From: Epithemia pelagica
Lineage: Eukaryota > Protista > Bacillariophyta
DNA length: 64,000 nt
Reading direction: 5' to 3'
Assembly (NCBI GenBank): GCA_946965045.2
Contig: OX337229.1
Location: 2,852,001 to 2,916,000 of the forward strand
Positions 2,393-19,513 of the stretch are shown here, piece by piece (position 1 is the first letter of the stretch; each line of letters opens with the position of its first letter). Position numbers and translations under genes: made by a program. A model generated the notes under the pieces. It did not search any database. It was given only the letters and a program-made list of their open reading frames with translations, and was not told the DNA's origin.

Positions 2393-2955
2393 CGTACTAT
2401 ATTTTCTTCGGCGGCATCTGGCCAAATGAATGGACCATTGCAAACGATCATCAGAAATGTGTTTTGTATCCACTGAACATAATCCACAACAAAAACATAA
2501 ACGTAACGTTTTTCGGTAATGATATGATTTATTTTCGAGAAAGTTTGATTTTGCGAAGAAGACTCTGTTGGCATTTTGTACTCTTTACTTCACTCCACAC
2601 GTGCATGTTCCTCGACTGACGTCATTTGACGGCGTGGGAACGTGCGGGCGGCCGACCGTTCATTTTCTTTTCCTGTTTGGAGGGTGAGAACGTGTTGACC
2701 GTGACAACCGACCAAGAACAAATCTCGGGAAGATTGTGATGCAGTTCCCCCTCACTTTTCTCGTTACCACTGTCCATTGTTTGAAGCAAAGATATCTCAC
2801 GTCCCTGGAGCTCCTATTTGACATCTACCCAACCAAGCTCCAGCTCATTCATTGGATTTAATTGCATTGTGAAGCAGAAAACGTCCTTCTCGTAGACCTG
2901 CTGTAGCGTTTAGCGTTTGACTTGTTACCTAGAGAGGTTGAAAGTGCTTGGGAAA

Positions 2956-5900
2956 ATGAGCGAGGATCAACCTGTGAAACAGTACCCTCGAAAGAAGTTT
3001 GCGTACGACGATTTACCTCCCACACCCACAAAGGAGCCTCCGCTACCGTTGTGGTCGGATGCCGCCAGGGATCATGTGCCGAATCCGTACAAGAACAGCG
3101 CTTTGACGGCTCCTCGAATCCAAGCAATTCGTGATAAGAGCACCTTGTCGGCGGAGAAGCGTGCCAAGATCGATTACGAACAAGCAGCCGATCTCTATCC
3201 CGCTTCCTTTCCTCATTTTGTGAGAGGACGCGACAGCCTTCGTAGCTACATTACGGAATGGTTCAGCACTTCAATCGCCATTTACGATGGTGCCATGGGG
3301 ACTATGATTCAAAACTATTCCAAAAAGAACAAGCTTGAAGAGGAAGAGTATCGTGGAGAGAAGTTTAAGGACTGGAAATGCAACGTCAAGGGAAACAATG
3401 ACATGCTTAGTATTACTCAGCCTGAAATCATTGCTGGAATATATAAACAGTACTTGGAAGAAGGGGGATCCAACATCATTGGAACCAACACATTTTCGTC
3501 TACGACCATTGCCATGGCCGACTACGAAATGGAAGACTATGTCTATGAATTGAATTACGAAGGCGCTCGACTTGCTCGCGATGCATGCGATGAAGTCACT
3601 GCTCGTGATCCCACCAAACCCCGGTTTGTGGTAGGTGCTATTGGTCCCACCAACCGAACCGCATCCATTTCACCCTCTGTGGAGGATCCTTCGGCACGCA
3701 ATGTTACCTTTGACGAACTTGTTGAAACGTACTTTGAACAAGTGGTTGGACTTGTTGATGGTGGTTCCGATATCCTCATGGTCGAAACTGTTTTTGACAC
3801 TTTGAATGCCAAAGCAGCGTTGTATGCGATTCAGGAGTTTCTCGAGTTGAGTGGACTTGACATTCCTATTTTCATCTCCGGTACCTTGGTCGACCAGTCC
3901 GGTCGTACCTTGTCTGGTCAGACGGGGGAAGCCTTTTATGCTTCTATTCGTCACACGAAACCAATGTGCGTCGGTATCAACTGCGCCCTGGGTGCCAAAC
4001 ACATGGTACCATTTGTGGACCGTGTGTCAAAGGCGGCTGAGTGTTTTGTGCTTGTGTATTCTAATGCTGGTCTTCCCAACGTCATGGGAGGATATGATGA
4101 TACTCCCGAAGACATGGCCACTGACAATGAAGTTTTCTTCAAGAATGGCTGGATTAACTTGGTGGGAGGTTGCTGTGGTTCTACTCCTCCCCATATCAAG
4201 GCTATCCGCGAGATGGCGGCCAAGTACCCACCTAGGAAACTGCCCGATACAACACGTCCTAAGATGTGGCTGTCAGGTCTTGAAGATCTGAAGGTTGAAG
4301 ATGTGCACAATCATCTTGGACTTCCCTTCCTGAATGTAGGGGAGCGCTGTAACATTGCAGGGTCAATCAAATTCAAGAAACTCATGATGGCAGGTGATTA
4401 TGGGTCAGCCATGGACATCGCAAAGAAACAAGTAGTAGATGGTGCTCATGTCATTGATATCAATGTGGACGATGGTCTTTTGGATGGACTAGCTGCCATG
4501 CAAAAGTTTGTCAAGATTGCCGTGACTGAACCAGAAGTGTCGAAGGCCCCTTTTATGTTGGATGCATCCAAGTTTGAGATTGTATTGGCTGGTCTTAAGT
4601 GGTGCCAGGGCAAGTGTATTGTGAACTCGATTTCCCTCAAGGTTGGAGAGGAATTGTTTATTGAACATGCGACTTTGTTGAGGAAGCATGGGGCAGCTGT
4701 GGTAGTGATGGCGTTTGATGAAAAGGGTCAAGCGGCGACGGAAGAGGACAAGGTTCGTATTTGCAAGCGTTCATATGATATTTTGGTCGAGAAGGTTCGC
4801 TTCCCTCCTGAAGATATTATCTTTGATCCCAATGTGTTGACCATTGGAACGGGACTCGAGGAACACGCGAATTATGGGGTTGACTTCATCAACGCAACGA
4901 AGCGCATCAAGGAGGAATGTCCGTACGTGAAGATTAGTGGAGGAATTTCGAACCTTTCTTTCGGCTTCCGTGGTGTGACAAAGATTCGTGAATCGATCCA
5001 TGGCGTTTTCTTGCACTACGCAATTTTGGACTCGGGCATGGATGTGGGCATTGTAAACTCGAAAGAGTTGTTGGCCTTGGGTGACATTGAACCGGATCTA
5101 CGTGAATTATGCGAAAACTTGGTGTTCAACAAGACACCCGAAGCAACAGATGAAATGCTAGAACGGACTGCTTACGAACGAGCTGTGATTGATGCGCGCA
5201 AGAAAGGTCTCCCACCGCCTCGAAAGCCACGAGGAAAAATGCGGAAACTTCCTCGCCTTGCTTTTGAATACGATGAGGTTGCACCGACACCCTCCGCTGA
5301 GCCTCCCCTCCCTGTGTCGGATGCGGCTCGGAATCATGTCCCCAACCCGTACAAGAATAGCGCGATCACTCACGAGAAAATTAAAGCTATCCGCGAGAAA
5401 AGTACTCTCCCAGCCGCCAAGCGGGACCTGATCGATTATGAACAGCCGTCCGACAAGTACCCCGAATCATATCCTTACTTCGTTCGAGGTAGGGACAGTC
5501 TTCGGAAATATATTACTCAGCTTTTCAGCACTCGAATTGCGCTGTACGATGGTGCGATGGGTACAATGATTCAAAACTATGCGAAAAAAAATAGGCTGGA
5601 AGAAGAAGAATTTCGTGGAGAGAGATTCAAGGACTGGACATGCAATGTCAAGGGAAACAATGATATGTTGAGTATCACCCAGCCCCAAATCATTCAAGAT
5701 ATCTATCGCCAATATCTCGTGGAAGGAGGATCTGACTTAATCGGGACAAATACGTTTTCTTCCACGACGATCGCAATGGGCGACTACGAAATGGAGCCAT
5801 ATGCATACGAGCTAAACTACGAAGGCGCAAGATTAGCCCGAGAGGTATGCGACGAGTTGACGGAGCAGGACCCCACCAGGCCTCGATTCGTTGTTGGTGC

Positions 5901-8900
5901 CATTGGTCCGACTAACCGCACTGCTTCAATCTCACCTTCTGTGGAAGACCCATCCGCTCGCAATGTGACATTCGATGAACTTGTCGACACTTATTTTGAA
6001 GAGGTTGTTGGACTTGTTGACGGGGGATCCGATATCCTCATGGTGGAAACAATCTTTGATACATTGAATGCCAAAGCAGCGTTGTATGCAATCGACGAGT
6101 TTTTAGACTTCAGCGGGCTCGATATCCCTGTATTTGTGTCAGGAACACTTGTCGATCAGTCTGGACGTACGCTTTCTGGCCAAACGGGTGAAGCGTTTTA
6201 TGCCTCGATTCGACACTCTAGGCCCATGTGTGTTGGAATCAACTGCGCCCTAGGTGCCAAACACATGGTACCGTTCGTTAAACGTATGTCCGACGCAGCT
6301 GAATGCTTCGTGCTTGTTTACGCAAACGCAGGTCTCCCAAATGTAATGGGAGGATACGATGACACCCCTGAAATCATGGCTGAGGACAACAAAGTTTTCT
6401 TCGAAAACGGGTGGATTAACTTGGTGGGAGGTTGCTGTGGTTCTACTCCTGCCCATATCAAGGCTATCCGCGAGATTGCGGGAAAATTCAAACCAAGGCA
6501 ACTGCCCGATACAACACGTCCCAAGATGTGGCTGTCAGGTCTTGAAGATCTGAAGGTTGAAGATGTGCACAATCATCTTGGACTTCCCTTCCTGAATGTA
6601 GGGGAGCGCTGTAACATTGCAGGGTCAATCAAATTCAAGAAACTCATGATGGCAGGTGATTATGGGTCAGCCATGGACATCGCAGGGAAACAAGTAGAAG
6701 ATGGTGCTCATGTCATTGATATCAATGTGGACGATGGTCTTTTGGATGGACTAGCTGCCATGCAAAAGTTTGTCAAGATTGCCGTGACTGAACCAGAAGT
6801 GTCGAAGGCCCCTTTTATGTTGGATGCATCCAAGTTTGAGATTGTATTGGCTGGTCTTAAGTGGTGCCAGGGCAAGTGTATTGTGAACTCGATTTCCCTC
6901 AAGGTTGGAGAGGAATTGTTTATTGAACATGCGACTTTGTTGAGGAAGCATGGGGCAGCTGTGGTAGTGATGGCGTTTGATGAAAAGGGTCAAGCGGCGA
7001 CGGAAGAGGACAAGGTTCGTATTTGCAAGCGTTCATATGATATTTTGGTCGAGAAGGTTCGCTTCCCTCCTGAAGATATTATCTTTGATCCCAATGTGTT
7101 GACCATTGGAACGGGACTCGAGGAACACGCGAATTATGGGGTTGACTTCATCAACGCAACGAAGCGCATCAAGGAGGAATGTCCGTACGTGAAGATTAGT
7201 GGAGGAATTTCGAACCTTTCTTTCGGCTTCCGCGGGGTCATGAAGATTCGTGAATCCATTCATGCTGTATTCTTGCATCATGCCATTTTGGAGTCTGGAA
7301 TGGACGTAGGAATTGTCAATGCAAAGGAGATGTTGGCAATTGACGAAGTTGAGTCTGAGCTCAGGGAAGCCGCAGATTCCCTCATTTTCAACAAGAGTGC
7401 CGAGGCAACCGAAGTCATGTTAGAACTGACTAGAAAGGAGAAAGAAGCAATAGAGGCCCGGAAGAAAGGTGGCGGTTCAACTGAGGTTAAGAAGACGTCT
7501 TGGCGCGACCTTGAGCCAAAGATAAGGCTAGAACATGCTCTGGTTAACGGGATTTCTGAGTATGTCGATTGTGATGTTGAAGAGGCACGTCAAAATGTTT
7601 CACGTCCCCTTGAAGTCATTGAAGGTCCTCTTATGGACGGAATGAATGTGGTTGGTGATCTATTTGGTGCTGGTAAAATGTTCTTGCCGCAGGTGATCAA
7701 ATCAGCTCGCGTTATGAAGAAGGCCGTTGCCTATTTGCTGCCGTTCATGGAGAAAGAGAAGCGAGAGAAAATGATTGCAGAGGATAAGAATCCTGAGGAC
7801 TTTGATGAGAACGACGAGTCCAACTTTGCTGGAAAGGTCCTCATGGCGACAGTGAAAGGTGATGTTCACGACATTGGAAAGAACATTGTGGCCGTCGTAC
7901 TTGGTTGCAACAACTTCAAGGTGTATGACATCGGAGTGATGTGTTCGTGCGAACTGATCCTTGAAAAAGCCAAAGAGTACAACGTAGACGTAATCGGTTT
8001 GTCAGGACTCATTACCCCTTCGCTTGACGAGATGGTTGTGGTAGCAAAGGAGCTGTCAAAGGGCGGTTTCAAGCAACCCCTCTTAATCGGAGGGGCCACA
8101 ACATCAAAGATGCACACAGCTGTGAAGATTGCTCCGAATTTCACTACCCTGGAACATCCTGTCATCCATGTGTTGGATGCCTCGAGATCTGTTACTGTCG
8201 TTTCTTCATTGCTCGGTGAAGGCAAGACTGACTTTGTAGAGGAAATTATGGAAGAGTACGAAGAGATGAGGGAAGATTACTATGCTGGATTGGAAGACCG
8301 CTATTTCCTCACCCACGAAAAGGCGAAGGAGCAGAAGCTTTCAATCAATTTTGACGAGTCCCCACCTCCCAGCACTCCGAAGAAGATGGGAGTTACACTC
8401 ATTGACTCTGTGTCCATCGAGGACATCGTGCCGTACATCGACTGGGTAAGTACAGAAGGGACCATTGGGCAGTATGTTTTAGATTCGGTTTTGATAGCAC
8501 TAACATTGTGTTTTCGTGTGAAGAATCCATTCTTCCAAACTTGGGAGCTTCGTGGGCGCTACCCCAATAGAGGATACCCTAAGATTTTCAACGACGAAAC
8601 AGTGGGAACTGAAGCCAAGAAACTTTTTGACGACGCACAGAAAATGATGAAGCAAATCATCGCAGACAAGAGCATGTGGTTGAAAGGGGTGGTTGGCCTC
8701 TTTGCGGCCAACAGAAGTGAAGATGGAGAGGATGTTCACATTTACGAGAACGAAGAAGATAGAGCTGCAGGCAAGGTCTGGAAGACATTCTGTATGCTTC
8801 GACAACAGGCAGAGAAAGAGTCTGAGGACCCCTATCTGTCTTTGGCTGACTTTGTGGCTCCAGCTGGTTACAATGATCACTTGGGAATGTTCGCTGTGGC

Positions 8901-9390
8901 TTCTTTTGGTTGCGATGCTCTGGTGAAGAAGTACGAAGCTGAGCACGACGATTATTCGAAGATTATGGCACAGGCTTTGGCGGACCGCTTTGTGGAAGCT
9001 TTTGCGGAGTACCTTCACCGCGAAATCCGGATTTCCTTGTGGGGTTACGCACCTGACGAACAGCTCAACGAAGAAGATCTTCTTAAGATCAAATACGACG
9101 GTATCCGTCCTGCTCCTGGTTATCCGTCGCAACCAGACCACACTGAGAAAAGTACCATGTGGAGTGCAATCCAAGCCAAGGAACTTGCAGGGATTGAACT
9201 CTCGGAGTCCTTGAGTATGATGCCTGCAAGTTCTGTCTCAGCTCTTGTGTTCGCCCATCCTCAGTCGGAGTATTTTGCTGTTGGCCAGGTTGGCAAAGAC
9301 CAGGTTGACAATTATGCAGAGCGTAAGAAGATGGAAATCTCTCTTTGCGAAAGATGGCTCTCTCCTATCCTGAATTATGAGAGAGACTAG
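2956..9390 (+). CDS. METH: Cobalamin-dependent methionine synthase with a duplicated Hcy+pterin module; one in-frame intron at 8446-8523; about 2118 aa
   Basis: YDGAMGT, GINCALG, GGCCG, NVGERCN and [10 protein letters not shown] motifs each occur twice, followed by a single B12 cap (GPLMDGM), B12-binding domain ([18 protein letters not shown]) and activation domain ([14 protein letters not shown]). The track start at 2917 is TTG; the first ATG is 2956. The insert VSTEG...CFRVK between DW and NPFF is bounded by gtaagt...gaag (78 nt). Confidence 0.97.
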
Positions 9391-12004: not shown

Positions 12005-13495
12005 ATGTCATCGATGGGTTTGACGGAAAGTGCGGAGACTGGGCGACAAGACTACGCTTCGCGACCACAGCAGATGGCCGTCTTGTTTGTACAAGCCCTC
12101 TCGTCTATACTGTCAACAGCTGGATCCATCAGTATCATTTACATTATTGTTCGGAACCGGAAGTGGGAGAAGAGCCTTTTTCACCGACTCATGCTTGGCC
12201 TTTCGGTTGGAGATTGCATTGTTTCATTGGGAACGTTAATGGGACCATATTTGCAACCACCTGATGAACTTCTTTTGGCGGCATCGGGCACCACCGCTTC
12301 GTGCTCATTTGCAGCAGTTTTGCAATACGCTCTTGTTTCAAACGTCTATTACAATGGTTTCATCGCGGTTTATTATTATCGGACCATTCGGCTTGGTGAG
12401 CGAGAAGAAAGATTGTCAAAGGCTTACGAAAAATGGATGCATGCTGTATCCATTAGTTTGTCTGTCGTAACAAGTGTTGTTGCCTTGTCGTTGGGTGCCT
12501 ACAATCCTGAAGAATCGGCTCGTCTATGTGGGTTCGCCTTTTACCCGACTAACTGCGATCGCAATACAGACTTGGAGTGCACTCGTGGACAATACACCAA
12601 AGAAATCACACTTTCAGTCCTTTGTCTCATTACTATCCCAGCTGTGAGTGGGATTGTCCTGACTATTCTTGTCTACAGACATGTCAAGCGCGTTTATAAC
12701 AAGAGTCGAAAGTACCGATACAATGCTGAGGAACGAGAATCGCAACGCAAACAACGACTCGCTCAACAAGCTGTCATGTATTGTTGGGCATACATCAACG
12801 CTTTTGTCTGGGGTGTATCGTCATTCACATTTGAAAGTCTTGTACATGGAGAAACCAGAGCAAACCTTGGGAGACCAGGTATCTTTGCGTACCTTTTGAT
12901 GCATGCCTTTTGTTTTCCGTTGCAAGGCTTTATCAATTACTTGGTCTACACTCGACCTCGGTATCGGAAAAGTCGAGAGATGCACCCAGATCGCAGTAGT
13001 ATATATGCGTTGTCACAAGTCTACAAAATGTCGGAGCATCGATACCGATCAAACAATCGCAACCGGGCGAGTTCCACGATGTTGGGACATTCCACGGTCA
13101 CCAGCCAGTGTTCTTCCGCTCATCCCAAACAATCAACGGTTACAACAAAAGCCGAGATGAATACCAATCCTAGAATTCAGCAATCGACTCAGCAATCGAC
13201 ACCTGATTTGACGCCAAACGATGTATGTGGGGATCGCAACACAACTTTGATATCACCAACGCCTTCGGTTCAAGAGGCGGAAACAGAGGAGAAGGAAGAA
13301 GTAGAGGAGCAAACTGGAGAACACCAATCACCATCAGGTTGCCAAACTTCAATGGAAGAAGGCGTGACCGAGGGGCCACCCTCTTCCCAAGACAATCATG
13401 CACTTCCAAAACCATCTTCTTATTCTCCACCCGAGGAGGAGTCCTCGGCTCAAGAGGAATGCGAGCCATACGACGACGAAAATTTTGACACCTAG
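12005..13495 (+). CDS. Seven-transmembrane GPCR-like receptor (cAMP-receptor/Git3-like) with a long polar C-terminal tail
   Basis: 496-aa ORF with about 7 hydrophobic segments: LFHRLMLGLSVGD (TM2), Cys in extracellular loop 1, RLCGF in extracellular loop 2, FPLQGFINYLVY (TM7), then a Ser/Thr/Glu-rich tail. Confidence 0.8.
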   Translation: MSSMGLTESAETGRQDYASRPQQMAVLFVQALSSILSTAGSISIIYIIVRNRKWEKSLFHRLMLGLSVGDCIVSLGTLMGPYLQPPDELLLAASGTTASCSFAAVLQYALVSNVYYNGFIAVYYYRTIRLGEREERLSKAYEKWMHAVSISLSVVTSVVALSLGAYNPEESARLCGFAFYPTNCDRNTDLECTRGQYTKEITLSVLCLITIPAVSGIVLTILVYRHVKRVYNKSRKYRYNAEERESQRKQRLAQQAVMYCWAYINAFVWGVSSFTFESLVHGETRANLGRPGIFAYLLMHAFCFPLQGFINYLVYTRPRYRKSREMHPDRSSIYALSQVYKMSEHRYRSNNRNRASSTMLGHSTVTSQCSSAHPKQSTVTTKAEMNTNPRIQQSTQQSTPDLTPNDVCGDRNTTLISPTPSVQEAETEEKEEVEEQTGEHQSPSGCQTSMEEGVTEGPPSSQDNHALPKPSSYSPPEEESSAQEECEPYDDENFDT

Positions 13496-14245: not shown

Positions 14246-16279
14246 TCATTTTCGGGTGGACTTTTCCAATTCACTTTGAATTTGTTGTACATCAATCGGT
14301 CGAATCATCCAGTTCGCCACAAGACTAATACCCATTAGTGCTGCAGCAGCGTAGCACGTTGTATCGTAGAGGAACGGTGTGGGATCAACGGTTCCAACGG
14401 GAACCACCTCCATCAATCGTGCAATAGTTATTGTCTTGGCATCTATGAGCGTTTCAATGGCAGAGGTGTCTTGTAATGAACATCCAAAGGCATGTTCAAA
14501 TGCCGACTCATCTCGCACCTTTGAAAGTAACTCTATTGTGGCGCCGTGGGCGGATTCTTGTCGCAAATAGGTCAAGCCCATGGGACCTGCCACTGCGCTT
14601 GCTGCCCAAGCCGTCAAGAGTTTTCCGTGGAGCGCACCCGAATGTTTGGGACCAAACAAATCGGCAATATAAGCTGGAAGTACCGACAAGACTCCACCAT
14701 AGAATGTAATGGCCAAGACTGAGCCACCACAAAACACAGCAACCATTGGCGTCAACAATGCTGAGGCGACATCCACGTTGCCTGCTGCGACTGCAGAAGC
14801 ATGAAGAGCATACTGGGTGAACGTTGGGCAGAGAGCGACAATGGGCAACGAAACCATCCCAAATAAGGTATATGTGTTACGCCGGCCAAGCGAATCGGAG
14901 ATAGCGCTCCAACCAAAGCGCCCCGCCGCCATGCCAAAGCCCAAAGCAGAGACGTACGCGGTGGCGAACGCAGGTGTCACGAGACTGGGGACCAAATTGG
15001 CCCAGAGATCCGTTAACATGACCTTGGAAGATGATACGAGTGCCAAACCTCCTGTGGCATTTCCAAATACGGAGAGCCATAACAATGGGAACTGAGAAGT
15101 CTTTTGCGTAACGTAATCGACCGGGAGTCCGTAATCATTTGGAGCTACTTGAGACGTTTCCTCTGAGGATGTTGAAGGATTCGTATTTTCGTCGGCTCCT
15201 GTGCTTACGTTGGGCGACCATGCAACATGAGGAATGCGCATAAAACGAGCCCCCAAAAGTCCCAGGCTTCCATAGAAGACTGACAATGTCGCAAGCGCTT
15301 TGGCGGTTCCCGAATCACCAGTTCCCAAAACGTATGCTCCAGGTCCAGGAAGACTGAACGCATGCTTTGCAATGTCCACATCAGTTGCCACAACTACCGG
15401 CGTCCCAGGAGTTCCCAGTTGCGAGGTCTTGGCAACCACCTGTGTTCCATCCTCCAGGGTGGTCAAGGTTACATGATCCGTGGCACAACCCGACGAGGCT
15501 GCACCGTCTGTCAGCACATGCAACGGGCCAATGTAATCCGGTGCAACAGCGTAGTAGTCTATACAACCCTGGATCATTGCTGGTGCAATGGCGGCACCTG
15601 CCCCAAAGGCTGACAAGGCTAACCCAGTGGCCAGACCACGTCGATCCGGAAACCACTTCATGACAGCGGAGACGGGGCTCAAGTACAAGAGACCCCAACC
15701 CATACCACCCAATACCCCCCATCCCAGGTAAACCAACGGAAGTGAATGACAGAGGACACCTGCGGCGGTAGTTAGGAGGGCCGAAGACCAGAGGACGGAT
15801 CCCACCAACGCTGCACGGCGTGGACCAACCGACTCGACCCAGGTGCCTAATGTGGCAGTGGTGATTCCCAGCACCACGGCAGAAGCCGACCATACAGGGA
15901 CAACATCTGCTTGAGTCCAATCTAAGGAACATGAAGATACGACTCCCAGAGCATGCGTCATTCCAGGAGTCCACATACTATAACAATAGACGGAACCTAT
16001 GGCCAAATGAACCGCGTTCGCCGGAGGGAGTGCCCACCAACGCTTCTCCACGGGAGTATCCACATCGGCAGTCGCCGCTTCCAGCGAGAAAGATGACAGA
16101 GACTTATTCTTTGATGCTTGAGAGGATGAGAACCGTACACAACCAGGTTCCGTAGCACCCCCAACTCCAAGGAACAAGGGAGGAGAAGCTTCTCCAAGTA
16201 TCATATACCTCAAACGTGATGATCCTAACCTCCGTTTCCAACTTAATTGAAGCATGCTGTGCATTCCCTTTACGCCCAT
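14246..16279 (-). CDS. MFS transporter, oxalate/formate antiporter (OFA) family
   Basis: 677 aa; AVHLAIGSVYCYS, WFPDRRGLATG, GRFGWSAISDSLGRR and PAYIADLFGPKHSGALHG are typical OFA/YhjX motifs. Confidence 0.88.
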   Translation of the reverse strand: MGVKGMHSMLQLSWKRRLGSSRLRYMILGEASPPLFLGVGGATEPGCVRFSSSQASKNKSLSSFSLEAATADVDTPVEKRWWALPPANAVHLAIGSVYCYSMWTPGMTHALGVVSSCSLDWTQADVVPVWSASAVVLGITTATLGTWVESVGPRRAALVGSVLWSSALLTTAAGVLCHSLPLVYLGWGVLGGMGWGLLYLSPVSAVMKWFPDRRGLATGLALSAFGAGAAIAPAMIQGCIDYYAVAPDYIGPLHVLTDGAASSGCATDHVTLTTLEDGTQVVAKTSQLGTPGTPVVVATDVDIAKHAFSLPGPGAYVLGTGDSGTAKALATLSVFYGSLGLLGARFMRIPHVAWSPNVSTGADENTNPSTSSEETSQVAPNDYGLPVDYVTQKTSQFPLLWLSVFGNATGGLALVSSSKVMLTDLWANLVPSLVTPAFATAYVSALGFGMAAGRFGWSAISDSLGRRNTYTLFGMVSLPIVALCPTFTQYALHASAVAAGNVDVASALLTPMVAVFCGGSVLAITFYGGVLSVLPAYIADLFGPKHSGALHGKLLTAWAASAVAGPMGLTYLRQESAHGATIELLSKVRDESAFEHAFGCSLQDTSAIETLIDAKTITIARLMEVVPVGTVDPTPFLYDTTCYAAAALMGISLVANWMIRPIDVQQIQSELEKSTRK

Positions 16280-18046: not shown

Positions 18047-19513
18047 TCATTCGCTTGAGGACATGCTGGCGAGGTCCCATCCTTCTCCTCGGTCAATTAC
18101 ATCTTTCCTGTTGGGTCCAACCCCGATCCATCGTATCGGGATGCCAAGCAGTTCTTGTACGCGCAAGATGTACTTCTGGCAATTCTCTGGGAGTTCCTCA
18201 AAGGTTTTACATGTACTAATGTCCTCTGTCCAGCCAGGTAGAACTTCGTATTCGACTTCCACATTACTCAACATCTCCAAAGAGGCTGGCATACTAGACA
18301 GGTATTCGCCTTTGTATTTGTACGCCTTTCCAAGCTTGACTTCTGGGATACCTGTGAGGACATCCACTTTGGTCAAATTGATGCTTGTGAATCCATTGAT
18401 TATGGCAGAATACTTCATTTGTGGAATGTCAAGCCAACCACATCGACGTGAACGTCCAGTCGTTGTGCCGTACTCGACTCCGACTTTGGAGAAATGCAAA
18501 CCAGGTCCTTCGCTAATGTCCAACTCGGTCGGAAATGGACCTTCGCCGACTCTTGTACAGTAGGCTTTAACAGTTCCGTAGATGCCTCTCAACTTCCGAG
18601 GACTCACACCTAATCCAGTTAATACACTTCCGACTGATGGATTGCTGCTCGTCACATAGGGGTAGGTCCCAAAGTCAATGTCAAGCATTGTCGCGTTAGC
18701 ACCCTCGACAAGAATTCTTTTTCCATCGGCAAACTGTCTGTTGGTATAATCGATAGTATCAATTGTCATTGCACCGACTCTTTGCGCAATCGATTTGTAA
18801 AATTCTAGTTGTGCGTCAACATCAATCTCCAAATCCGAAAAATGCCGCATGTGCTGCTCTGCCAATGCTCGGAAACGGCGCTCGAAAAACTCCCAATCCT
18901 GCAGATCGCCCACTCGCAGTCCATTTCGACTTATTTTGGATGCATAAGCCGGGCCGATCCCCTTCTTTGTGGTACCAATTTTGTGGCGACCTAGTTTCGC
19001 TTCTTGTCGCCCGTCTACTTCCTGGTGAAAGTCAAACACCAAATGTGCCCGGTCCGAGATAAAAACTCGCCCAGCGTAGTCGACCCCCGACTCTGTCAAG
19101 GAATCTAGTTCATTCAAGAAAGATGGAAGATGAACTACGACACCATTGCCAATAACACATGTTGCCTTTGGATTCAACACGCCTGACGGGAGCAGGTGAA
19201 ACTTGTATTTCTTTCCATCCACGACGATTGTGTGACCAGCGTTGGATCCACCGGCGACACGAGCACAAACATCGTAATCCTGGGACAACATGTCTACTAG
19301 TTTGCCCTTGCCCTCGTCACCCCACTGCGCGCCAAGAACAATGTCGATTCCATGCGGTTTTGCAGAAGAGGTGGTCTGCGAAGAAGAGTTCTGGTAGGGT
19401 CCGGCAATCAAGCCCTCAATACGATGGACACTTCGAGAGATGTCGAATAGCATGTCCAAAATGGTTTTCGGTGGGGAATCGCAGCTAGTTCTTCCTTGTT
19501 GTTCGTTGTTCAT
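18047..19513 (-). CDS. purA: Adenylosuccinate synthetase
   Basis: GAQWGDEGKGK, GGSNAGHT, IGTTKKGIGPAY, EGANATMLDIDFGTYPYVTSS and GTTTGRSRRCGWLD. Confidence 0.98.
   Translation of the reverse strand: MNNEQQGRTSCDSPPKTILDMLFDISRSVHRIEGLIAGPYQNSSSQTTSSAKPHGIDIVLGAQWGDEGKGKLVDMLSQDYDVCARVAGGSNAGHTIVVDGKKYKFHLLPSGVLNPKATCVIGNGVVVHLPSFLNELDSLTESGVDYAGRVFISDRAHLVFDFHQEVDGRQEAKLGRHKIGTTKKGIGPAYASKISRNGLRVGDLQDWEFFERRFRALAEQHMRHFSDLEIDVDAQLEFYKSIAQRVGAMTIDTIDYTNRQFADGKRILVEGANATMLDIDFGTYPYVTSSNPSVGSVLTGLGVSPRKLRGIYGTVKAYCTRVGEGPFPTELDISEGPGLHFSKVGVEYGTTTGRSRRCGWLDIPQMKYSAIINGFTSINLTKVDVLTGIPEVKLGKAYKYKGEYLSSMPASLEMLSNVEVEYEVLPGWTEDISTCKTFEELPENCQKYILRVQELLGIPIRWIGVGPNRKDVIDRGEGWDLASMSSSE

What the first reader, a model, noticed from the sequence alone, without database searches (positions are those of the whole stretch)
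2956..7460. Methionine synthase with two complete Hcy+pterin modules feeding one cobalamin domain
Seen: roughly 2998-5200 and 5263-7460 are a tandem in-frame duplication (offset about 2262 nt, 754 aa). Both copies keep the Zn-ligand motifs GINCALG and GGCCG and the pterin-barrel motifs, while the cap, B12-binding and activation domains are single. Known: canonical MetH has one Hcy, one pterin, one B12 and one AdoMet module, and the B12 domain shuttles between them. Inference: one cobalamin serving two substrate modules could change turnover per B12 in a B12-scarce habitat, or let the modules specialise. The Hcy halves differ at many codon third positions, so this is not a trivial assembly duplication. 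I cannot tell from here whether other diatoms share the architecture.
Basis: partly seen in the sequence, partly recalled or inferred. Interest (0 to 1): 0.8.

Follow-up and report, generated by a model that had tools for sequence, protein, structure and literature searches.

The report
Methionine synthase with doubled substrate half
This diatom's only intact vitamin-B12-dependent methionine synthase really does carry two complete homocysteine-plus-folate modules ahead of a single B12 domain. The same 2- to 4-module layout turns out to be common in algae and related protists, yet I found no paper describing it.

Summary
Window 2956-9390 (+) is one gene with a 78-nt in-frame intron. It encodes a 2118-aa (about 236 kDa) cobalamin-dependent methionine synthase. 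A 754-aa unit (N-terminal arm, Hcy barrel, pterin barrel) occurs twice, offset 2262 nt, ahead of one cap, one B12 and one activation domain.

Contigs of three sequencing runs carry the unique junction and break at the borders of the identical tract, so it is not a mis-join. Both modules keep the zinc motifs and 179-181 of 185 (Hcy) and 164-165 of 165 (pterin) residues invariant in single-module diatom enzymes. Where the copies have diverged, synonymous sites are saturated and replacements are few (omega about 0.08).

The pterin parts are identical over 4261-4970 and 6523-7232, which indicates gene conversion.

The layout is not special to this diatom. Two, three or four modules occur in other diatoms, labyrinthulomycetes, pelagophytes, dinoflagellates and green algae, including transcript-derived sequences. 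Stramenopiles share one junction motif, so their duplication is old and kept alike by conversion.

Seven literature searches found no description. How one B12 domain uses several modules is inferred, not shown.

The parts
2956..9390 (+). METH gene: exon 1 at 2956-8445, intron at 8446-8523, exon 2 at 8524-9390 including the stop
   Evidence: ORF and translation; Pfam; the spliced product of 2118 aa matches homologues at YIDW|NPFFQ
2956..3279 (+). N-terminal arm 1 ('Next', about 108 aa), a stramenopile-specific extension with motifs EPPLP and FVRGRDSLR
   Evidence: No Pfam hit. Present in single- and multi-module stramenopile METH. Absent from human MTR, whose alignment starts at residue 94 of the module
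3280..4215 (+). Homocysteine-binding barrel 1, with Zn motifs GINCALG at 3973-3993 and GGCCG at 4165-4179
   Evidence: Pfam PF02574; motifs; 181 of 185 columns invariant in single-module diatom METH are kept
4339..5058 (+). Pterin (methyltetrahydrofolate) barrel 1
   Evidence: Pfam PF00809, two stretches; 165 of 165 invariant columns kept
5059..5250 (+). Tail 1 and inter-module linker; the duplication junction ARKKG|[14 protein letters not shown] lies at 5194-5250
   Evidence: Compared with tail 2 and the N-terminus. The motif is shared with other diatoms, Mucochytrium, Hondaea, Chrysophaeum and P0001. Contigs of three runs cross it
5251..5541 (+). N-terminal arm 2 (Next2)
   Evidence: In-register copy of arm 1. 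Predicted ordered: pLDDT 88-97 in model m5490dbfe33dc
5542..6477 (+). Homocysteine-binding barrel 2, with GINCALG at 6235-6255 and GGCCG at 6427-6441
   Evidence: Pfam; motifs; 179 of 185 invariant columns kept
6601..7320 (+). Pterin barrel 2
   Evidence: Pfam PF00809, best stretch; 164 of 165 invariant columns kept
7321..7524 (+). Tail 2, of the terminal type (ARKKGGG...SWRD), leading into the cap
   Evidence: Terminal tails of diatoms, labyrinthulomycetes and Chrysophaeum form one clade, SH-aLRT 98
7525..7737 (+). B12-binding cap domain, single copy
   Evidence: Pfam PF02607
7831..8115 (+). Cobalamin-binding domain, single copy, with the motif GDVHDIGKN (DxHxxG) at 7858-7884
   Evidence: Pfam PF02310; motif
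8446..8523 (+). 78-nt phase-0 intron (GTAAGT...CTAAC...AG), in frame and free of stops
   Evidence: Sequence. Removing it gives [15 protein letters not shown] as in Epithemia, Nitzschia, Hondaea and Volvox. The Epithemia and Nitzschia gene models are 77 and 81 nt longer than their coding sequences
8524..9330 (+). AdoMet-binding reactivation domain, single copy; it begins just upstream of the intron
   Evidence: Pfam PF02965
4261..4970 (+). Gene-conversion tract, copy 1: identical to 6523-7232 except at 4423, 4424 and 4436
   Evidence: The contigs of the runs break at its borders
6523..7232 (+). Gene-conversion tract, copy 2
   Evidence: One X4 contig joins 6412-6499 directly to 4238-4970

Best explanation
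Shown: window 2956-9390 encodes a cobalamin-dependent methionine synthase (METH, EC 2.1.1.13 by homology). Its substrate half (N-terminal arm, Zn-dependent homocysteine barrel, methyltetrahydrofolate barrel; 754 aa) is present twice in tandem before one cap, one B12-binding and one reactivation domain. It is the only uninterrupted METH in this genome, and no METE was detected. Both modules look catalytically competent, and each is under purifying selection on its own. The duplication is old: stramenopiles share the same junction, and module position is orthologous with Epithemia in the arm and tail. The cores are repeatedly homogenised by gene conversion. In this species conversion now covers only the pterin barrel, so the Hcy barrels have drifted apart at silent sites. 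The same 2- to 4-module design occurs across algal and protist lineages. Inferred (about 45%): the single B12 domain sits on its flexible tether, and module 1 hangs on a roughly 20-residue Pro/Arg/Lys linker. The B12 domain therefore visits the folate and homocysteine sites of both modules. Cob(I)alamin would then meet a loaded methyl donor sooner, and methylcobalamin a loaded acceptor sooner. That would raise flux per cobalamin and shorten the oxidation-prone cob(I) state.
For: Architecture: Pfam. Module 1 aligns to the N-half of human MTR (4ccz) at E 1e-227. Reality: contigs of runs X1, X2 and X4 cover 2956-4179, 4150-4970 and 4941-6441. They break exactly at the borders of the identical tract, and the contig holding the junction and Hcy2 is present in all three. 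The other METH locus in the genome is only 72-80% identical, so it cannot be the source of either module. Competence: motifs and invariant columns. Selection: pS 0.56-0.77 against pN 0.075-0.10 between the copies. Conversion: zero synonymous differences over 630 nt beside saturated flanks. Epithemia, Nitzschia and the three-module protein P0001 show the same mosaic with different tract borders. Age: shared junction motif, tail tree and positional orthology with Epithemia. Spread: including transcript-derived sequences P0025, P0040 and P0140. Essentiality: no PF01717 match in the genome, and the second locus is split by a transposon. Tether: the linker has pLDDT near 70 and arm 2 has 88-97.
Against: No tool here shows that the B12 domain reaches module 1. 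The model gave no inter-domain contacts, and pTM 0.71 is compatible with module 2 alone being well placed. No labelled RNA run of this organism was available; X4 looks like a transcriptome only by its size. The DNA runs may be the assembly's own data. The layout also occurs in freshwater and terrestrial algae, and animals that also scavenge B12 have one module, so B12 economy is not singled out. In some relatives one Hcy barrel has decayed, so full duplication of both activities is not always needed.
Confidence: 0.72

Rival explanations
1. Assembly artefact: two alleles, haplotypes or the genome's two METH loci were wrongly joined into one tandem gene.
For: A second METH locus exists on contig C10. 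The runs that hold the stretch may be the assembly's own data.
Against: The junction-bearing contig 4941-6441 is present in three runs, and contigs break only at the identical tract. The C10 modules are 72-80% identical to the window's, so neither window module comes from there. The frame stays open through 2262 nt of diverged copy, with omega about 0.08. The same junction motif occurs in many independent assemblies and transcriptomes.
Confidence: 0.02
2. The upstream module does not serve the in-cis B12 domain. It works apart: in trans on another METH chain or on free cobalamin, or as a substrate-binding or regulatory appendage.
For: Own knowledge: isolated E. coli MetH N-terminal fragments exchange methyl groups with free cobalamin (Goulding, Postigo and Matthews 1997). 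Modules are joined by a flexible basic linker. The C10 locus, split by a transposon, separates a two-module N-half from a C-half.
Against: Nothing favours trans over cis use. Conservation of both active sites fits either reading.
Confidence: 0.18
3. Sub-functionalisation: one module mainly provides the folate half-reaction and the other the homocysteine half-reaction.
For: One-sided decay is seen elsewhere. Module 1 of the C10 paralogue has lost the Cys-Cys pair and altered the first motif while its pterin barrel is kept. Module 1 Hcy of P0031 and P0085 carries deletions, and module 2 of P0027 reads GGCSG. A cluster of three replacement changes (K to G, V to E) sits inside the otherwise identical pterin tract at 4423-4436 against 6685-6698.
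Against: In the window gene all four barrels keep their motifs and nearly all invariant residues. The two position-specific changes shared with Epithemia (E109D in module 1, E68V in module 2, by alignment column) lie at sites that vary in human MTR.
Confidence: 0.06
4. Neutral copy-number drift: unequal crossing-over adds and removes modules without functional consequence.
For: Copy number varies from 1 to 4 among relatives. A two-module transcript (P0025) sits next to single-module Thalassiosirales in the trees. Identical cores favour unequal exchange.
Against: The junction has been retained across deep stramenopile lineages. There is strong purifying selection on both diverged copies here. 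About 700 extra residues would be costly if useless.
Confidence: 0.05

Closest known systems
Canonical cobalamin-dependent methionine synthase (E. coli MetH, human MTR; PDB 4ccz, 9ssp, 8ssc)
   Same: All five domain families occur in the same order. Module 1 aligns to human MTR residues 4-635 at E 1e-227. The three zinc-ligand cysteines, the DxHxxG cobalamin motif and the reactivation domain are present.
   Different: The Hcy+folate half is present twice, with an extra arm of about 100 aa before each Hcy barrel. The product is about 236 kDa rather than about 140 kDa.
Multi-module METH entries already in sequence databases (e.g. Nitzschia inconspicua P0011, Epithemia clementina P0004, Hondaea P0055, Volvox carteri P0131, Chlorella sorokiniana P0135, Polarella P0109)
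   Same: Tandem Hcy+pterin modules precede one cobalamin half. Within stramenopiles the junction motif and the arm are the same.
   Different: In most of them the modules are 95-100% identical. Here the Hcy barrels are only 86.5% identical with saturated silent sites, so selection on each copy can be read. These entries are annotated simply as methionine synthase or hypothetical protein.
MetE, the cobalamin-independent methionine synthase (double barrel that arose by intragenic duplication; PMC539065)
   Same: A methionine synthase enlarged by tandem duplication of a barrel module.
   Different: It is an unrelated fold family. By the abstract of PMC539065 it needs no intermediate methyl carrier. 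From my own knowledge, its N-terminal barrel has lost catalysis, whereas both modules look active here.
Split or modular corrinoid methyltransferase systems (MtgB/C/D/E and split MetH1/MetH2, as described in bioRxiv 10.64898/2025.12.19.695462)
   Same: It works like them in principle: one corrinoid-binding unit exchanges methyl groups with more than one methyltransferase module.
   Different: There the modules are separate proteins with different substrates. Here they are near-identical copies fused in one chain.

Membership tests
Cobalamin-dependent methionine synthase (MetH/METH) | Homocysteine S-methyltransferase barrel with three zinc-ligand cysteines | tested here: met
   PF02574, E 4e-171, two stretches. 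GINCALG and GGCCG occur in both.
Cobalamin-dependent methionine synthase (MetH/METH) | Pterin-binding (methyltetrahydrofolate) barrel | tested here: met
   PF00809, E 8e-98, two stretches. 165 and 164 of 165 invariant columns are kept.
Cobalamin-dependent methionine synthase (MetH/METH) | Cap plus Rossmann-type B12-binding domain with DxHxxG | tested here: met
   PF02607 and PF02310, one each. GDVHDIGKN lies at 7858-7884.
Cobalamin-dependent methionine synthase (MetH/METH) | AdoMet-dependent reactivation domain | tested here: met
   PF02965, E 3e-105.
Cobalamin-dependent methionine synthase (MetH/METH) | One copy of each of the four functional modules (canonical layout) | tested here: not met
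   Hcy and pterin occur twice. This makes it a variant layout, not a different family.
Cobalamin-dependent methionine synthase (MetH/METH) | [quoted passage not shown] | not testable with these tools
   Needs an enzyme assay.
Stramenopile multi-module METH (informal class defined here) | Internal junction A(R/K)KKG-LPPP(R/K)KPR... followed by a second N-terminal arm (PRxxFxYD, EPPLP, FVRGRDS) | tested here: met
   The window has ARKKG|[14 protein letters not shown]|PRLAFEYDE at 5194-5277. The same pattern is in P0004, P0011, P0005, P0016, P0025, P0040, P0055, P0002 and P0001.
Stramenopile multi-module METH (informal class defined here) | Module cores kept alike by gene conversion while arm and tail stay diverged | tested here: met
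   In-register nucleotide profiles of the window, Epithemia, Nitzschia and P0001. pS is 0.00 in the window's pterin part.
Stand-alone homocysteine methyltransferases (BHMT and HMT type, PF02574 only) | Hcy barrel without pterin and cobalamin domains | tested here: not met
   Each Hcy barrel here is followed by a pterin barrel within one reading frame. BHMT matches only at E 8e-4.

The most novel reading that the evidence does not exclude
Multiplying the Hcy+folate half (2 to 4 copies) per cobalamin domain may be a general, so far undescribed design of methionine synthase in B12-scavenging algae and protists. One B12 domain would shuttle among 4 to 8 active sites, raising flux per cobalamin or protecting cob(I)alamin from oxidation. 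In this diatom gene the two Hcy barrels have escaped homogenisation. That makes it a natural handle for module-specific peptides, mutations and kinetics.
Probability: 0.35. Interest if true: 0.8.

Novelty: new variant of a known kind. Interest (0 to 1): 0.62.

Why it matters
Methionine synthase is the enzyme through which vitamin B12 limits algal growth. It is also a textbook case of a domain that swings between active sites. An enzyme with two to four substrate halves per B12 domain changes the geometry of that cycle and possibly the yield per cofactor. It would affect how METH abundance in proteomic and transcriptomic surveys is read as B12 demand. It also shows that tandem near-identical modules can be collapsed or broken in short-read assemblies, so published single-module algal METH models may under-count modules. 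The diverged copies in this genome allow each module to be tracked separately.

Tried and rejected
- **Mis-join:** rejected on the contig layout and on the distinctness of the C10 locus.
- **Independent recent duplications in each species:** considered as the reason why modules cluster by species. Rejected for stramenopiles because arm, tail and junction are old and shared.
- **Faster evolution of the window's Hcy copies:** suggested by long branches. Against Nitzschia the difference from Epithemia is small (pN 0.11 against 0.087-0.088), so I dropped the claim.
- **First window-versus-Epithemia dN/dS:** the run was out of register (the colinearity check gave 7%) and is void. One search repeats it on a codon alignment.
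- **Pfam on the two N-terminal arms and on the ORFs inside the C10 insert:** nothing found.
- **RNA evidence:** the metatranscriptome X5 laid no contig on the stretch, and no labelled RNA run of this organism was offered.
- **Structure model:** it gave confidence values but no coordinates to a script, so contacts between module 1 and module 2 could not be measured.
- **Literature:** seven searches and eight papers read found no description of multi-module METH. That is absence in the held library only.
- **Single-module diatom METH as collapsed assemblies:** not resolved. The Cyclotella atomus gene has no gap, but that does not exclude collapse.
- **Spliced protein:** never sent to a search tool. 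Searches used the unspliced frame by reference or the exons apart. The exons were joined only inside a script, for length and mass.
Full report
**1. Is it there?**

A single open frame runs from 2917 to 9390 on the + strand, with the first ATG at 2956. Pfam finds two homocysteine S-methyltransferase stretches and two pterin-binding stretches. It finds one each of the B12 cap, the B12-binding domain and the reactivation domain.

Direct repeats lie exactly 2262 nt apart. In a scan of offsets from 1800 to 2700, only 2262 gives high in-register identity, 0.77 against about 0.30. The zinc-ligand motifs GINCALG and GGCCG each occur twice, and the cobalamin motif GDVHDIGKN occurs once.

A 78-nt GT...AG intron at 8446-8523 happens to be in frame and free of stops. 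Removing it gives [15 protein letters not shown], as in Epithemia, Nitzschia, Hondaea and Volvox. The product is then 2118 aa and 235.8 kDa. The exons were joined only inside a script for these two figures. Every search used the unspliced frame by reference or the exons apart.

**2. Is it real DNA?**

I laid the contigs of three runs of the same organism on window 2956-6500, a stretch chosen to hold only one copy of the identical part. In each run the contigs cover:
- 2956-4179 (arm 1 and Hcy1);
- about 4150-4970 (the shared pterin part);
- 4941-6441 (end of module 1, junction, arm 2 and Hcy2), in one piece in X1 and in two pieces in X2 and X4.

The breaks fall at the borders of the identical tract, as expected when a graph assembler meets a two-copy repeat. 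One X4 contig joins 6412-6499 directly to 4238-4970, which is Hcy2 running into the shared pterin sequence.

The shared contig's word depth in X1 and X2 is about twice that of its neighbours (241-249 against 129-134). The tool warns that contig depth should not be leaned on, and that these runs may be the assembly's own data.

X4 totals 39 Mb with a longest contig of 19.6 kb, and its contig ends 90 nt upstream of the ATG. It looks like a transcriptome but carries no label. Transcription of both modules in this organism is therefore likely, not shown.

The genome has a second METH locus on contig C10. Its modules are only 72-80% identical to the window's, so neither window module can be a mis-placed copy of it.

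**3. Are both modules working parts?**

I used the columns that are invariant in 17 single-module diatom enzymes. Module 1 keeps 181 of 185 Hcy columns and 165 of 165 pterin columns. Module 2 keeps 179 of 185 and 164 of 165. The departures are mostly conservative.

Between the two copies, the 5' part of the Hcy barrel has pS 0.77 (saturated) and pN 0.10. The 3' part has dS 1.04 and dN 0.079, giving omega 0.08. Each copy has thus been held by selection over a long time, independently of homogenisation.

Module 1 aligns to the catalytic N-half of human MTR (4ccz, residues 4-635) at E 1e-227. No METE domain was found anywhere in the 60.5-Mb assembly, and the C10 locus is interrupted. The window gene is therefore probably the cell's only intact methionine synthase.

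**4. A mosaic of old and young sequence**

Window 4261-4422 and 4437-4970 are identical to the stretches 2262 nt downstream. The only differences in the tract are at 4423, 4424 and 4436, and the first mismatch outside it is at 4260. Its flanks differ by about 25%.

The same mosaic, with different borders, appears in three other loci:
- In Epithemia clementina, unit nt 900-1980 are nearly identical.
- In Nitzschia inconspicua, unit nt 91-1980 are about 100% identical.
- In P0001, a three-module protein from an environmental contig, identity is patchy at 84-99%.

In all of them the arm (the first 90 to 270 nt of the unit) and the last 280 nt or so (the tail after the pterin barrel) are diverged, at 54-77% identity. 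In Nitzschia only the first 90 nt of the arm are diverged. The simplest reading is an old duplication whose core is repeatedly overwritten by gene conversion.

In the arm and tail, replacement distances pair the window's module 1 with Epithemia's module 1, and module 2 with module 2. Same-position distances are 0.09-0.16 and cross distances 0.22-0.25. The duplication therefore predates the split of those two diatoms, whose silent sites are themselves saturated.

**5. How far does it reach?**

Among the 120 best word-search hits to the window protein, most are two-module proteins of about 2000-2140 aa.
- Two modules: Epithemia clementina, Nitzschia inconspicua, a diatom transcript from MMETSP, and the labyrinthulomycetes Mucochytrium and Hondaea.
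- Three modules: Chrysophaeum taylorii and P0001.
- Single-module proteins of about 1360 aa: Cyclotella, Skeletonema, Mediolabrus and Nitzschia sp. Nitz4.

A second search used the three-module Polarella protein as query. Its length filter excludes single-module enzymes. It brought in the following:
- Dinoflagellates with two or three modules: Symbiodinium natans, Effrenium and Prorocentrum.
- Green algae with three modules: Volvox carteri, Chlamydomonas incerta and C. eustigma, Chlorella sorokiniana, Dunaliella, Botryococcus, Ostreobium and Trebouxia.
- Green algae with four modules: Haematococcus and Bryopsis.
- Green algae with two modules: Chlorokybus, Mesostigma, Pedinophyceae and Chlorella vulgaris.

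Of the 195 proteins held, 39 have one module, 135 have two, 18 have three and 3 have four. The second search was biased to long proteins, so these are not frequencies.

Within a protein the modules are usually 95-100% identical. The window, at 86.5% in Hcy, is an outlier, which is what makes selection readable here.

**6. One origin or many?**

In stramenopiles the internal junction reads A(R/K)KKG-LPPP(R/K)KPR..., followed by a second arm. The motif is seen in diatoms, Mucochytrium, Hondaea, Chrysophaeum and P0001. The terminal tail instead reads ...KKGGG...SWRD.

In a tree of the 52 residues after each pterin barrel, 19 of 23 terminal tails from all these lineages form one clade (SH-aLRT 98) and the internal tails lie outside it. 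The internal/terminal label needs 4 changes against 14.5 under shuffling, and none of 500 shuffles was as low. The alignment is short, and constraint from the neighbouring cap could add to the signal. Together with the shared junction, though, it favours one old duplication in stramenopiles.

Green algae share a different conserved linker (LDPKSKPTAV...DPLAPD..LPPVP.Y), and dinoflagellates a third. Whether the three go back to one event is open. Copy number read from short-read assemblies may be wrong in either direction.

**7. How it probably works**

Known MetH has a rigid Hcy-folate half and a B12 domain on a flexible linker. The B12 domain alternates between the folate site, the homocysteine site and the reactivation domain (PMC10293825, PMC10567725).

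Here a second such half hangs on a Pro/Arg/Lys-rich linker of about 20 residues. In an AlphaFold model of residues 450-1520 (mean pLDDT 82, pTM 0.71) the second arm is confidently placed (pLDDT 88-97) although it is mostly coil. The linker scores about 70.

My best reading, at about 45%, is that the one B12 domain uses the sites of both modules. That would raise the chance that cob(I)alamin meets a loaded methyl donor and methylcobalamin a loaded acceptor. More flux per cofactor and a shorter oxidation-prone state would follow. The rivals are use in trans or apart from the cis B12 domain, division of labour between modules, and neutral copy-number drift.

Decay of one Hcy barrel with the pterin barrel kept occurs in the C10 paralogue and in P0031 and P0085. 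In P0027 one cysteine is lost in module 2. This hints that the extra folate barrel may be the more valuable part. It is only a hint.

**8. The second locus (noticed in passing)**

The locus lies at C10 about 123.7-144.6 kb. It holds three pieces:
- a 100% identical copy of the gene's first 1500 nt or so, which is a recent 3.3-kb segmental duplication;
- a 1560-aa frame with two modules, identical to database protein P0086;
- cap/B12 and reactivation exons, 10.9 kb further on, 81-84% identical to the window's.

The 10.9 kb is bounded by 12-nt inverted ends (CACTGCAAGTCA and its reverse complement). Without it the reading would be SWR|DFECKKRLEHAL, which parallels the window's [15 protein letters not shown]. 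This is a terminal-inverted-repeat transposon inserted into the coding sequence. All pieces are still open, so the insertion is probably recent.

**9. Known or new?**

Such sequences sit in public databases, labelled methionine synthase or hypothetical protein. Seven full-text searches and eight papers read found no mention of repeated Hcy or pterin modules. The papers included surveys that scanned algal METH for these very Pfam domains (PMC11439496, PMC11197592, PMC10828217) and structural papers on MetH.

This is absence in the held library, not proof. I rate it a new variant of a known kind: a genuine METH by every testable feature except the single-copy layout. The window gene is one member of a wide class.

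Noticed in passing
G000:C10:123709-144551 (loci L009, L010, L011, L016, L017): A second METH locus in the same genome. It has a recent 3.3-kb 5' segmental duplication and a two-module N-half (1560-aa frame, identical to P0086). Cap/B12/activation exons lie 10.9 kb downstream. The gap is an insert bounded by 12-nt inverted ends (CACTGCAAGTCA / TGACTTGCAGTG), i.e. a TIR transposon inside the coding sequence. All pieces are still open.
   Followed up: partly
L011:4045-8724 (C10 paralogue, module 1): The Hcy barrel of module 1 reads GLYCGYG for GINCALG and VGGF--STP for VGGCCGSTP, so the Cys-Cys zinc ligands are lost. Its pterin barrel stays conserved.
   Followed up: partly
window 4423-4436 versus 6685-6698: Three replacement changes (K to G, V to E; [10 protein letters not shown] against [10 protein letters not shown]) cluster inside the otherwise identical conversion tract. 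The K to G change falls in a column invariant in single-module enzymes. The X1 and X2 contigs follow the window's copy 1 at 4423-4424, while the X4 contig reads G,G, the copy-2 letters, so both versions occur in the runs.
   Followed up: partly
window 8446-8523: A 78-nt intron that is in frame and free of stops, so the unspliced frame reads through it. Naive ORF translation adds 26 false residues to the activation domain.
   Followed up: yes
proteins P0027, P0031, P0085: Relatives with one damaged Hcy barrel. P0027 (88% identical to the window) has GGCSG in module 2. Module 1 of P0031 and P0085 has deletions and loses the Cys motifs, while its pterin barrel is kept.
   Followed up: partly
protein P0148 (Mesostigma viride): The N-terminal arm holds a domain with a precomputed PF16561 hit, of the glycogen-binding CBM type by my reading. 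The domain is repeated along with the module.
   Followed up: no
protein P0123 (Symbiodinium sp. CCMP2592, 4119 aa): Two successive sets of three Hcy+pterin modules plus a cap in one gene model. This is probably two tandem genes fused by annotation.
   Followed up: no
whole genome G000: No match to the METE catalytic domain PF01717 anywhere in the 60.5-Mb assembly, which suggests B12 auxotrophy.
   Followed up: partly
window 12005-13492 (+), 14249-16279 (-), 18050-19513 (-): Neighbouring frames: a weak 7TM-receptor-like frame (below the Pfam cut-off), an MFS transporter, and adenylosuccinate synthetase. The genes that flank METH in Epithemia clementina (a Syf1-like HAT-repeat gene and a strictosidine-synthase-like gene) were not among the frames scanned.
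   Followed up: no
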